NCBI RefSeq assembly: GCF_000002075.1
Contig: NW_004798154.1
Coordinates: forward strand, 195,395-259,394
Direction: 5' to 3'
Length of the DNA: 64,000 nucleotides
DNA from: Aplysia californica
Taxonomy: Eukaryota
The translations under genes were made by a program, and so were the position numbers. The notes beneath the pieces are model-generated. The model worked only from the letters and a program-made list of their open reading frames with translations. It was not told the origin of the DNA and did no database searches. This document shows, in pieces, positions 32,501-38,069 of this stretch (position 1 is the stretch's first letter; each line of letters opens with the position of its first letter).

Positions 32501-35500
32501 GTAAAAGTTTTACTGGATAAAATTTGGACACCGCTACTCATCAGCCTGAATTATTTGATGGATTTTTCTGAACAGCCAGAATTAAATAATTTTGACATTG
32601 CTTAAGCTCTATCGTTTCTGTATCATCAACAAATTTGAATCTAGATTTAACTCAATCACTATGCCAAAAAATTGTCTGCAACTCCAGGGTGAGGTTGGAC
32701 TTGAAAAAAGCAGATTTTAAAATTCCGAAATTGCCTGACACAATGCGCTTCCATTAAAAAATACCAATTTAAGTGTCAAGTTTTTGTTTAAAAAATGGCC
32801 ATTATTACAAACGTGGATTTGTGTATTTAATTATGGGTGGTGAAAACATGTTCTGTGTCATTCTGGCGGAAGGAGGTAAATGTAAAAGACTTCGAGCTTG
32901 TTGTTCTGGCTGATAAAAATTTAGAGTACAGCAAACCATTTGCATTTTTATTCAGTCTTGTTGAATGATTATGTTGTGTTGAATGGGGTGTTTCATTCTG
33001 TACCCTTTTAAAAAAAAAGTTCATTCTTATTTTAAAATATTTTTTTTTGGTCATTGGTTTTGTTTTATATAACATGACTTGCAAAAGTATAAGCGCGACA
33101 AGTTTTAAATTTTGCCTTGAAATATTTTCACAGCCTGACAGACAGACTCTTATGTGGAGTGCCACGTGGCCCAAGGAAGTTCGCCGGCTTGCAGAAGAAT
33201 TCCTCAATGACTACATCCAGGTGAACATTGGTGCCCTGCAGCTGACTGCTAACCACAACATTCTACAGATCATTGATGTATGCATGGACCATGAGAAAGA
33301 GGAAAAGTAAGTAAACTGTTTTCTACTGCTGATCCACTTCCCTCCTGTGCCTGTTAACTACTTAATAGGAATGGGCTACCTTTTCTTTTTTATACGAGTA
33401 AATGTTTGTTTTACAGCACAAGTACTGCTTTTGGTTTTATGATAGTTGGTATGACGCCTTAAATGTTTTTTTTTTAGTTACAATGTTCAATAATAATTGC
33501 ATTTAATTTTTTCTAGTTTTGTCTTTTTATTCAATTGTGCCTTGATTTAATTTTTCACATTTTTGTTTCTACAGACTTGTGAAACTTCTGAATGAAATCA
33601 TGCAGGAGAAAGAAAACAAAACTCTCATATTTGTAGAAACAAAAAGAAAGGCTGATGATATCGCCCGCCGAATGAAGCGTGATGGGTAAGTTTGTTTTTC
33701 TTTTAACCATTAATTTTAGAATGTTCAGTTTTTAGGGTAATATTTTTTATATTTTTTTCAAAAATTCATTTGACCTCAAACTGACACAGTGATATGCAAA
33801 GTGGTTTGATGTGATTAAATATTTTTCTAGTGTTTTCGGTCTTTAACACATGGGTGCCAGACCTTGTGTTGCTTGCGGGAAGACCCTCATGTATGGCTCA
33901 AGTGGGAAGAAAGCCTTTCGTGATCATGCTTTGGACACTGGACACAAAAACCGTTTGAACTCCGTGACAAGAAACTGCAGGCTCTCATGTAATTTCTAGA
34001 TCTAGACGTTATGAGAATCATGTTTCAGTTTCAGTCACCCCCCAAATACACTACTAGATTTAGATTTCAGTCACTCTCCATGACTGAAGTTTATGGTATG
34101 AAGTATATTCCTGGCTTTTGCTGGTTTCGAAATGTGTCATGTTAAAATTTTTTCCTGATCATTGTTTTTAATTAGGGCAAAAAATCGATAGGCTAATTGT
34201 ATGGCAGGCATAAATTCCAATATTACGTTGTCTGTTTAATGTTTTGTAACAAAGTGCTAATGAGATGATTTTATGCTTCAGGTGGCCTGTGTTGAGCATC
34301 CATGGTGACAAATCTCAGCAAGAGCGTGACTGGGCTTTGAATGGTAAGATTTTTTGTGTGTTAAGGTTTCACTATTCTAGAACGTGAAGAATGCACTAGT
34401 GTTCAGTGGGATGCCAAATGTCCGGTTTTTCCGGTTTTTTTTTTCATCCTTTGGAATTGCAAAGGAAAGGTGAGAGGTAAGAGAATGTGTTTTTGTTCGC
34501 TCATTTAAAAGCTTTACAAGGTTCGGTTAAGGTGAGATGTGATGCTCCGCTCATTAAAAATTTTTTTTTTCAAAAATCATTTGGCATCCCTGATGTTATA
34601 CAAGATCTTGCAAGATTGAGTCCTTCATGTATCTCTTTTTGTCACCCTCAGATTTCCGCAATGGCAGAAATCCTATCCTTGTTGCTACAGATGTTGCCTC
34701 TCGGGGATTAGGTAAGATGTCAAAACTGTTCTATTTTCTGTTTGAATAAATTAGGGGCAGGGGTTATATATGGTTTCACTTAAAATTCAGGAGTTTGTTT
34801 TTATTTTGTCCTGGAGTTTGCGACTCCAAAAGTAGAAACAAAGATTTATGAAATGAGCTCCCACCCTCCAAACATTCACCACACACTTCATTTGCATCCT
34901 TTCTTGATAGGTTCTGTGAGTTTGCCTATCCACAATGAAATATGTGTGTTGTGTATTTAGTATTGCTTTAGATTGTTTTTGTTACTTGGTGACTTTTCTT
35001 CATGAATGTGTTTTGAATTGATTTTTTTTTTTTTTTTCAATACGATTAGGAGATTGTCATCAAAGAAATTTTTTTGGGTAATAGTTTTAGTCTCTATTGA
35101 CCATTGCCTATTAGAGAGGTTTAAAGATTATTTTTGTGAGTTGAGATGTTCATGTTGTATATTTTGTCTGATAAATTGTAGGATTAACTTGGCATGTGGT
35201 CTTGAGTGTTAGTGCATTTATGCTTTTTGATAACTTCAGTTCCTCCTTTCAGCAGCAAGTGTCCAGCAGCCACAATTAATTGTTACAGTTTTTGTACAAG
35301 GGGCAAGCTGAAGTGTTATTGCCTTCGTACTTACGACTTGATTATCAGTAACTGTTAACTTGTTTTTTAATAGACTCATCTCTCTTGTAATACCACTTTC
35401 TTTTATAGTTCTCTTGGGTCTTTTATATTTTCTTGGTTTAGGATTTACTTCAGGGGTGGGCAAACTTTTTCGATAGTTGGCCATTTCGACTAGACCACAA

Positions 35501-38069: not shown

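What the first reader, a model, noticed from the sequence alone, without database searches (positions are those of the whole stretch)
34712..36683. Candidate autoregulatory module in the DDX5 motif-V intron: poison exon plus perfect TACTAAC branch point
Seen: this ~2-kb intron interrupts ...ASRGL-G|D... in motif V. It holds a GC-richer block bounded by a TAGTAG acceptor (35828-35833) and a GTAAGT donor (36009); either acceptor gives an in-frame TGA after 5-6 codons. The true 3' splice site has an exact TACTAAC, which is uncommon in metazoan introns. Established: yeast DBP2 and human DDX5 have an intron at this conserved position, it mediates Dbp2 autoregulation, and it is frequently retained in DDX5. 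Inference: this lineage may use an NMD-coupled cassette exon for helicase homeostasis.
Basis: partly seen in the sequence, partly recalled or inferred. Interest (0 to 1): 0.75.

Follow-up and report, generated by a model that had tools for sequence, protein, structure and literature searches.

The report
Retained helicase intron with poison exon
In this mollusc-like animal's DDX5 helicase gene one ancient intron is left in the RNA far more often than its neighbours, and it holds a stop-carrying extra exon whose end is conserved in a land slug, which points to an old self-limiting switch.

Summary
The splice-like signals alone are not beyond chance: 141 of 1000 shuffled introns hold an equally good pseudo-exon.

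Two other results give the region weight.
- **Retention.** In two transcriptome-like contig sets the whole 1972-base intron sits in RNA at word depth about 22. Most neighbouring intron stretches sit at 0-5. One set also carries the normal splice at depth 152.7.
- **Conservation.** The 192-residue Arion vulgaris protein P0003 is the orthologue's C-terminal part. Its first 24 residues align to window 35939-36007 and stop exactly at the proposed GTAAGT donor. Residue 25 is the codon made by the exon's last C plus the next exon's AT. The local score is 44, and 0 of 2000 shuffles reach it.

So the internal exon's donor and its last 70 bases are conserved, and the donor is probably used in a relative.

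Still unshown:
- no junction was seen in this species;
- the acceptor is untested;
- NMD coupling and autoregulation are untested.

The TACTAAC is statistically rare, but at least two relatives lack it.

Verdict: observation confirmed, interpretation partly supported. It is a new member of a known kind.

The parts
34652..34711 (+). Upstream coding exon (..[19 protein letters not shown], motif V), ends in phase 1
   Evidence: Collinear tblastn to the full-length relative P0098; boundaries read; spliced joint 34711>36684 in a contig of X6 at depth 152.7
34712..36683 (+). The conserved-position intron (1972 bases), selectively retained in RNA
   Evidence: One 2010-base contig 34682-36690 in X11 (depth 21.6). 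Contigs 34682-35102 and 35085-36711 in X6 (depths 8.4 and 22.3). Most neighbouring intron stretches at 0-5. 20 of 24 listed runs hold 0.94-0.99 of the words of 34600-36950
34747..34749 (+). First in-frame stop (TAA) if the intron is retained, 12 codons after the exon
   Evidence: Translation
35772..35874 (+). Predicted hairpin that pairs the pyrimidine tract and both AGs of TAGTAG with the first bases of the candidate exon
   Evidence: -31.4 kcal/mol, z -3.69, 1 of 200 shuffles as stable. It is the only one of 55 windows with z below -3, and it scores so on both strands
35828..35833 (+). Candidate tandem acceptor TAGTAG (untested)
   Evidence: Sequence. 13 of 17 pyrimidines before the first AG and 11 of 17 before the second. 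No junction evidence
35834..36008 (+). Candidate PTC exon (175 bases, or 178 from 35831); TGA at 35848-35850
   Evidence: Translation; single copy in the own genome at the sensitivity
35939..36008 (+). Conserved 3' part of the candidate exon: aligns to residues 1-24 of the Arion vulgaris protein P0003, and its last C starts residue 25
   Evidence: tblastn 14 of 24 identical. E 1.1e-4 in the 411-base region, best of 150 N-terminal queries. Smith-Waterman score 44 against a maximum of 39 in 2000 shuffles over six frames
36009..36014 (+). Internal 5' splice site GTAAGT
   Evidence: Sequence; the P0003 alignment stops exactly before it and continues at 36686
36655..36661 (+). TACTAAC, probable branch site of the true 3' splice site
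36662..36683 (+). C/A-rich tract and CAG acceptor; fewest T of the 10 mapped introns (5 of 17; the others 7-11)
36684..36920 (+). Downstream coding exon ([14 protein letters not shown].. to ..MRGG; motif VI)
   Evidence: PDB matches: DDX17 1.4e-31, DBP2 1.5e-17

Best explanation
The intron that splits motif V of this DDX5/p68-type helicase gene is an unproductive-splicing module with two outputs.

(1) Shown: the whole intron is removed poorly and stays in a sizeable share of the RNA, far more than most neighbouring intron sequence. The retained form stops after 12 extra codons, so it cannot make a full helicase.

(2) Partly shown: the intron holds an internal alternative exon. Its 5' splice site (36009) and last 70 bases are conserved in a stylommatophoran slug, where the recorded product runs from this exon directly into the next coding exon. 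In this genome any such inclusion brings a TGA within 5-6 codons and shifts the frame.

Inferred: both outputs divert pre-mRNA from productive mRNA and set the helicase level. The mechanism would be nuclear detention or decay of the retained form and NMD of the exon-containing form. By analogy with yeast Dbp2, this probably responds to the helicase's own abundance. The perfect TACTAAC probably makes up for a T-poor tract at the true acceptor in this species and is not a regulatory signal in itself.
For: Gene identity: the downstream exon matches human DDX17 (1.4e-31) and yeast DBP2 (1.5e-17) best among solved structures. Eleven collinear exon matches to a full-length relative.

Retention: X11 has one contig 34682-36690 at depth 21.6, against 1.1-5.3 in other intron stretches. 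X6 has intron contigs at 8.4 and 22.3, against 0 in other intron stretches, plus the spliced joint 34711>36684 at 152.7. The intron contigs end 30 bases inside the upstream exon, as expected where spliced and unspliced forms branch. 20 of 24 listed runs from 8 studies hold 0.94-0.99 of the words. 16 of those 20 have contig sets of only 33-132 million letters, against a genome of 927 million.

Conserved internal exon: P0003 (Arion vulgaris) aligns residues 26-104 to 36686-36922 (89.9%), residues 103-190 to the last exon (52%), and residues 1-24 to 35939-36007. Residue 25 (H) fits C at 36008 plus AT at 36684-36685. Score 44, with 0 of 2000 shuffles reaching it. P0003 is the orthologue of this gene and not of the paralogue: 89.9% against 80.5%.

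PTCs.

Precedent: passages in PMC4695336 describe the intron as conserved in position and length, poorly spliced in several organisms, and linked to autoregulation in S. cerevisiae. Ddx5 retains introns in all five vertebrates studied (PMC5688624). Human DDX17 has a poison exon (PMC12894984).
Against: No joint at 35831, 35834 or 36008 was seen in any of the four runs laid. The X11 intron contig runs unbroken through both proposed boundaries.

The two raw poly(A) runs show no retention. Intron depth is 0 in 10 of 11 bins (X21) and 8 of 11 bins (X22), while upstream exons sit at about 2-13. These libraries are strongly 3'-biased, and conserved exons may have been filtered out.

X6 and X11 are only guessed to be RNA. 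My grounds are the spliced joint, the small contig sets and the empty neighbouring introns.

Splice-like signals of this quality arise by chance in 14-26% of shuffled introns.

Only one relative supports the exon. That its record comes from a transcriptome is my recollection, not a tool result; if it is an ab initio gene model, donor use is unproven and only the conservation stands.

The paralogue's intron at the same position shows no related block.

Nothing here tests NMD or feedback.
Confidence: 0.55

Rival explanations
1. Decoy exon. The internal exon is rarely or never included in this species. Instead its splice sites engage the intron's own ends in dead-end complexes, and that is what causes the whole-intron retention.
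For: Retention is the dominant observed output, and no inclusion junction is seen. The intron is over 1 kb, and the internal exon has a perfect +1..+6 donor. This is the setting described for decoy exons in the abstracts of PMC7373989 and PMC6097662.
Against: The Arion record reads from the exon into the next exon, so the donor can complete splicing at least there. Nothing shows that retention depends on the exon.
Confidence: 0.15
2. Retention only. The splice-like pair in this species is a chance pseudo-exon, and the module consists solely of the poorly spliced conserved intron, as in the yeasts.
For: 141 of 1000 (GTAAGT) and 258 of 1000 (GTRAGT) shuffled introns hold an equal pseudo-exon. 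There are no junctions and no related block in the paralogue.
Against: The P0003 N-terminus matches precisely the last 69 bases before the donor, with 0 of 2000 shuffles as good, and the junction codon fits.
Confidence: 0.15
3. Alternative first exon. A promoter inside the intron gives a short transcript that starts in the block and encodes an N-terminally truncated protein: the end of the second RecA domain plus the Gly-rich tail.
For: P0003 starts with a Met in the block and is open to the natural C-terminus. The ATG is conserved at 35939.
Against: In this genome that frame closes with TGA after 8 codons, so it is not conserved as coding. The product would lack most of the helicase core. No molecule starts were listed there (table 6: none).
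Confidence: 0.1
4. The GC-richer block is an embedded small RNA gene (miRNA or snoRNA). The title of Moore et al. 2011, seen only in a reference list, reports a miRNA in the human DDX5 intron.
For: The human precedent (reference list seen; the paper itself is not held). C-box-like and CUGA-like strings occur in the block (read by eye).
Against: No Rfam family reaches threshold in the window. In the intron only two chance-level matches appear, at E about 9. Folding of the block is no better than shuffles, with z from -1.2 to +1.6 in 35800-36119 and z 0.11 at the donor.
Confidence: 0.03

Closest known systems
Yeast DBP2/dbp2 conserved intron (S. cerevisiae autoregulation, Barta and Iggo 1995; S. 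pombe decay-promoting intron 2, PMC4695336)
   Same: The same gene subfamily, and an intron that the paper calls conserved in position and length. It is poorly spliced, and the retained pre-mRNA lowers expression (passages). Here the intron is likewise long and selectively retained.
   Different: In the yeasts the whole intron acts, through Mmi1/exosome in S. pombe, and no internal exon is described. Feedback by the protein is not tested here. I saw Barta and Iggo only as cited in PMC4695336 (not held).
Vertebrate DDX5 intron retention and the 'alternatively spliced' conserved intron (PMC5688624; Moore et al. 2011)
   Same: Ddx5 is listed as intron-retaining in all five vertebrate species studied (passage). 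The conserved intron is described as alternatively spliced (title only).
   Different: Which vertebrate intron is retained is not stated in the passage I read. The human intron is said to encode a miRNA, and nothing of that kind is found here.
Human DDX17 poison exon (PMC12894984)
   Same: The paralogous helicase carries a PTC exon whose inclusion lowers transcript level (passages).
   Different: Its position in the gene is not given in the passages read. Homology with the exon here was not tested, and I did not compare any human sequence.
Decoy exons in retained introns (PMC6097662, PMC7373989) and the OGT detained intron with a poison exon
   Same: A large retained intron that holds a cryptic exon with working splice sites (abstracts).
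   Different: Dependence of retention on the exon is unknown here.
Plant DRH1 'DEAD' RNA motif (bioRxiv 10.64898/2026.01.23.701338)
   Same: A DDX5-type helicase limits itself by exposing an alternative 3' splice site hidden in a structure, which gives PTC isoforms and retention (passages). Here a hairpin with z -3.69 covers the candidate acceptor.
   Different: The plant element lies in an intron covered by a reporter made of the gene's 5' part, so a different intron. There is no evidence of common origin, and the hairpin here has no covariation support.

Membership tests
DDX5/DDX17/Dbp2 subfamily DEAD-box helicase gene | Second RecA domain (motifs V and VI) most similar to DDX17/DDX5/Dbp2 among DEAD-box proteins | tested here: met
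   Downstream exon: DDX17 1.4e-31 and DBP2 1.5e-17, ahead of DDX3X at about 1e-13
DDX5/DDX17/Dbp2 subfamily DEAD-box helicase gene | Complete collinear helicase core on one strand | tested here: met
   11 collinear tblastn pieces to P0098 residues 45-492, all with GT..AG borders. The joined model was not searched.
Conserved DBP2/p68 intron | Intron at the same codon of motif V (..RGL | D-V..) | tested here: inconclusive
   Same position and phase in this gene and in its paralogue on C183. The exon starts at about residue 426 of the yeast Dbp2 chain. That this is the yeast and human intron position rests on the statement in PMC4695336 and on my recollection of the yeast gene structure.
Conserved DBP2/p68 intron | Inefficient splicing, with unspliced RNA accumulating more than for the gene's other introns | tested here: met
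   Depth about 22 against 0-5 in two contig sets; spliced form at 152.7 in X6. Not seen in two 3'-biased raw poly(A) runs.
Conserved DBP2/p68 intron | Negative feedback by the helicase protein on its own intron | not testable with these tools
   Needs knock-down or over-expression
NMD-coupled poison cassette exon | Both splice sites used in vivo in this species | tested here: inconclusive
   No joints at 35831, 35834 or 36008 in 4 runs. The raw runs are too shallow, and contigs drop rare forms.
NMD-coupled poison cassette exon | Inclusion introduces a premature stop | tested here: met
   TGA after 5 or 6 codons; length 175 or 178, both 1 mod 3
NMD-coupled poison cassette exon | Conservation of the exon across species, above the intron background | tested here: inconclusive
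   The last 69 bases and the donor position are conserved with Arion. The 5' part and the flanks could not be compared because no relative's DNA was on hand.
NMD-coupled poison cassette exon | The isoform is stabilised when NMD is blocked | not testable with these tools
   No such data set could be laid
Decoy-exon-mediated intron retention | Retention depends on the internal exon's splice sites | not testable with these tools
   Needs a minigene or antisense masking
Intronic miRNA/snoRNA host | Match to a known RNA family, or a fold better than shuffles | tested here: not met

The most novel reading that the evidence does not exclude
The hairpin at 35772-35874 is a helicase sensor. It hides the pyrimidine tract and both AGs of the poison exon's acceptor. 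When DDX5 is abundant it opens the stem, the exon (or a dead-end complex on it) forms, and productive mRNA falls. This would be an animal counterpart, of independent origin, to the plant DRH1 'DEAD' motif. It would sit in the very intron that yeasts use for Dbp2 feedback.
Probability: 0.1. Interest if true: 0.8.

Novelty: new member of a known kind. Interest (0 to 1): 0.5.

Why it matters
The DBP2/DDX5 intron is one of the oldest known examples of an intron kept at one position for regulation. Until now it has been documented in yeasts and vertebrates. Here a lophotrochozoan shows the same selective retention. The intron also carries an internal stop-bearing exon whose end is conserved between two distant heterobranch gastropod lineages. 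This suggests that the intron's regulatory role is ancestral to opisthokonts, and that animals added exon-based unproductive splicing to it. Records from a bug, a termite and a butterfly also enter the same downstream exon from a different upstream exon. That hints the arrangement may be widespread in protostomes. A well-studied neurobiology-type invertebrate with many RNA data sets would make this directly testable.

Tried and rejected
Rfam found nothing at gathering scores in the whole window. Within 34500-36900 it found only two chance-level matches, at E about 9.

Own-genome DNA searches with the intron, the block, the hairpin region and the inverted-repeat element each found only themselves. 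The tool warns that it skips common words, so this excludes near-identical copies only.

The paralogue on C183 was compared. It has the same intron position, and the intron is about 7.3 kb long. No intronic similarity appeared, either by blastn (best non-exon E 0.12) or with the P0003 N-terminus.

A structure scan of 55 windows on both strands gave only the hairpin at the acceptor. Nothing was found at the donor or over the 421-base block (z -0.77).

A word search with P0003 residues 1-40 found only P0003 itself, 1 of 7 candidates. The search with whole P0003 found no further gastropod isoform.

A degenerate pattern scan of metagenome contigs gave 2 chance hits in contigs of 63-66% GC with no helicase exon.

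Three papers are not held: Moore 2011, Barta and Iggo 1995, and Iggo 1991. I know them only from the text and reference list of PMC4695336.

No paper describing a poison exon in the conserved DDX5 intron was found by the searches. Supplements were not opened and could hold such events.

Earlier notes of the scan held nothing on this locus.
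Full report
THE SEQUENCE

The window's + strand carries a DDX5/p68-type DEAD-box gene from about 27800 to 38100.
- The upstream exon ends at 34711 after ..ASRGL, with one base of the next codon.
- The intron runs from GT at 34712 to AG at 36683, 1972 bases.
- TAGTAG is at 35828-35833, GTAAGT at 36009-36014 and TACTAAC at 36655-36661, 23 bases from branch A to the acceptor.
- Joining the upstream exon to 35831 or to 35834 gives a TGA after 6 or 5 codons. 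The 178- or 175-base insert also shifts the frame.

Two small corrections are needed. The split codon is GAT (D). The candidate exon ends in C, so its donor context is GGC|GTAAGT. The block 35912-36111 is GC-richer than most of the intron: 0.59 and 0.44 in its two bins, against 0.25-0.45 in most others.

GENE IDENTITY AND MODEL

The downstream exon (36684-36920) matches human DDX17 (1.4e-31) and yeast DBP2 (1.5e-17) best among solved structures. DDX3X and others follow at about 1e-13 or worse. A full-length relative, P0098, aligns in eleven collinear pieces. I refined these to GT..AG borders. The read joints 33306>33575 and 34711>36684 confirm two of the borders. Exons were searched one by one, and the joined model was left out of all searches.

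The own genome holds a paralogue on contig C183 that is 81% identical over this exon. It has an intron at the same codon and phase, about 7.3 kb long.

IS THE SPLICE-LIKE PAIR MORE THAN CHANCE?

Not by itself. An acceptor of equal quality (YAG with at least 13 of 17 pyrimidines) lying 50-300 bases before a GTAAGT occurs in 141 of 1000 dinucleotide shuffles of the intron, and in 258 of 1000 with GTRAGT. In the real window, 6 of 18 GTAAGT on the + strand and 6 of 12 on the - strand have such an acceptor. Three of the + strand cases are true exons of this gene. An early stop is expected in any non-coding insert.

WHAT THE RNA DATA SHOW

Twenty of the 24 listed runs, from 8 studies, hold 0.94-0.99 of the sampled words of 34600-36950. 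Sixteen of these 20 have contig sets of only 33-132 million letters, against a genome of 927 million. None is on record as RNA; the tool only guesses so.

I laid two of them (X6, X11) and two raw poly(A) runs (X21, X22) on 33000-38200.
- In X11 one contig of 2010 bases covers 34682-36690, with no other letters and one gap, at word depth 21.6.
- In X6 two contigs cover 34682-35102 (depth 8.4, with a 10-base insertion allele) and 35085-36711 (depth 22.3). A further contig carries the normal splice 34711>36684 at depth 152.7.
- Other intron stretches of the gene lie at 0 in X6 and at 1.1-5.3 in X11. The exceptions are three repeat-like stretches (34392-34565, 37002-37175, 37524-37697), which show many variants and loose ends.

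The spliced joint, the empty neighbouring introns and the small contig sets are my grounds for treating X6 and X11 as RNA. The intron contigs stop 30 bases inside the upstream exon, as expected where spliced and unspliced forms branch in the assembly graph. The intron is therefore selectively retained, at roughly one eighth of the spliced form in X6 by word depth. The retained form stops at TAA 34747-34749.

Against this, the two raw runs show no retention. Intron depth is 0 in 10 of 11 bins (X21) and 8 of 11 bins (X22). These libraries are strongly 3'-biased: depth is about 100 at the 3' end, about 2-13 on exons 33134-33685 and near 0 on the conserved exons. The tool also drops human-like reads silently.

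No run shows a joint at 35831, 35834 or 36008. The X11 contig passes both proposed boundaries unbroken. Contigs drop rare forms, so this shows that inclusion is at most minor at steady state. It does not show that inclusion is absent.

CROSS-SPECIES EVIDENCE

An exhaustive protein search with the downstream exon nevertheless returned P0003, 192 residues. The collection names it UniRef100_A0A0B7AVK6 of Arion vulgaris, a stylommatophoran heterobranch gastropod.

Against the window:
- residues 26-104 match 36686-36922 (89.9%);
- residues 103-190 match the last exon at 37752-38057 (52%), so the record is spliced;
- residues 1-24 match 35939-36007 (14 of 24 identical, one gap), ending at the last full codon before the proposed donor;
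- residue 25 is H, the codon formed by C at 36008 plus AT at 36684-36685. A read-through of the intron would give D, as it does in 224 of the 232 stored relatives that have a residue there.

The match scores 44 by Smith-Waterman over all six frames of the intron. Two thousand shuffles of the peptide give mean 24.8, sd 2.9 and maximum 39, and none reaches 44. It is also the best of 150 N-terminal queries against the block (E 1.1e-4; next best 0.001).

In this genome the same frame holds a TGA after 8 codons. The conservation is therefore of nucleotides and not of a protein. P0003 is the orthologue of this gene and not of the paralogue: 89.9% against 80.5%, and the tail matches only this gene.

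So the internal donor position and the 70 bases before it are conserved, and the donor is joined to the next exon in the Arion record. That the record comes from a transcriptome is my recollection and needs checking. What lies upstream of its Met is unknown, so a cassette, a long exon extension and an internal first exon all remain open.

Records from Triatoma infestans (P0146), Zootermopsis nevadensis (P0273), Danaus chrysippus (P0285), Cooperia oncophora (P0004) and one unnamed source (P0277) also enter this exon with a junction residue other than D, after an unrelated N-terminus. Some of these are gene models.

THE BRANCH SITE

TACTAAC occurs three times on both strands of the window. In 2 of 5000 shuffles of the last 300 bases it falls in the branch zone. 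It is the only CTAAC-type site in the last 50 bases of the ten introns mapped. The tract behind it has the fewest T of those introns: 5 of 17, against 7-11 for the others. Its pyrimidine count is average, 12 of 17 against 9-15.

Read-through ORFs from close relatives show T-rich intron ends that cannot encode TACTAAC in the last 99 bases (P0151) or 60 bases (P0002). One relative (P0160) has a V-L-T that could encode it, at nearly the same distance. The paralogue lacks it. I read the motif as compensation for a T-poor tract in this lineage and not as a conserved signal.

STRUCTURE

One of 55 scanned windows stands out, on both strands (z -4.0 and -3.6). It is a hairpin at 35772-35874 (-31.4 kcal/mol, z -3.69, 1 of 200 shuffles as stable). 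Its upper stems pair the pyrimidine tract and both AGs of TAGTAG with the first bases of the candidate exon. There is no covariation evidence, and with 110 tests the significance is modest.

It recalls the plant DRH1 'DEAD' motif, in which the helicase opens a structure that hides an alternative acceptor (passages). That is my most novel reading, at low probability.

COMPARISON WITH WHAT IS KNOWN

Passages of PMC4695336 state that the dbp2 intron is conserved in position and length from yeasts to higher eukaryotes. They also state that it is poorly spliced in several organisms, that it lowers expression through decay of the unspliced RNA in S. pombe, and that retention in S. cerevisiae is relieved in a helicase-dead mutant. 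Ddx5 is listed as intron-retaining in all five vertebrates studied in PMC5688624. Human DDX17 has a poison exon (PMC12894984). Decoy exons inside large retained introns are described in the abstracts of PMC6097662 and PMC7373989.

The locus fits this known kind. What is new is its documentation in a lophotrochozoan and the conserved internal exon. My literature searches found no description of such an exon in the conserved DDX5 intron. Supplements were not seen.

VERDICT

- Shown: gene identity; selective whole-intron retention in two contig sets; premature stops in both unproductive forms; conservation of the internal donor and of the 70 bases before it.
- Inferred: inclusion in this species; NMD or nuclear decay; feedback by the helicase.
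- Not supported: a regulatory role for TACTAAC.

Noticed in passing
G000:C183:757861-765457 (loci L010, L011): A second DDX5/DDX17-like gene in the same genome, 81% identical over the motif-VI exon. It has an intron at the same codon and phase, but the intron is about 7.3 kb long, has no TACTAAC, and shows no similarity to the window's intron.
   Followed up: partly
window 37583-37640 (similar ORF-like strings near 31000-31360, 39550-39800, 40880-41100): A short interspersed repeat inside the next intron. It shows very high depth in RNA-like contigs (219 and 1104), many variant letters, 'goes back 40' joints (up to 54 reads a run) and many loose ends in the raw reads. The similar translated strings come from the ORF list.
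   Followed up: no
window 35450-35466 / 35697-35713: 17-base inverted repeats, 94% complementary, bound a roughly 260-base element in the intron, like a miniature transposon. The own-genome search found no other copy, but that search skips common words.
   Followed up: partly
proteins P0146, P0273, P0285, P0277, P0004: Records from a kissing bug, a termite, a butterfly, an unnamed source and a nematode enter the same downstream exon from an unrelated upstream sequence, with junction residue Y or N instead of D. Alternative exons in this intron may be widespread in protostomes, although some of these records are gene models.
   Followed up: partly
protein P0078: A relative with 25 extra in-frame residues between ..ASRGL and D-VEDVKF, as if a short intron at this position were read through in frame.
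   Followed up: no
window 34857: A 10-base insertion allele in the intron in the contigs of X6 but not of X11. Otherwise the 2-kb intron is identical to the reference in both runs.
   Followed up: no
Its role was not examined.
   Followed up: no
window 37048-37120: A palindromic stretch (I6) where contigs of X6 and X11 show several alternative short skips of 33-66 bases and loose ends. It looks like a variable or multi-copy element in the downstream intron.
   Followed up: no
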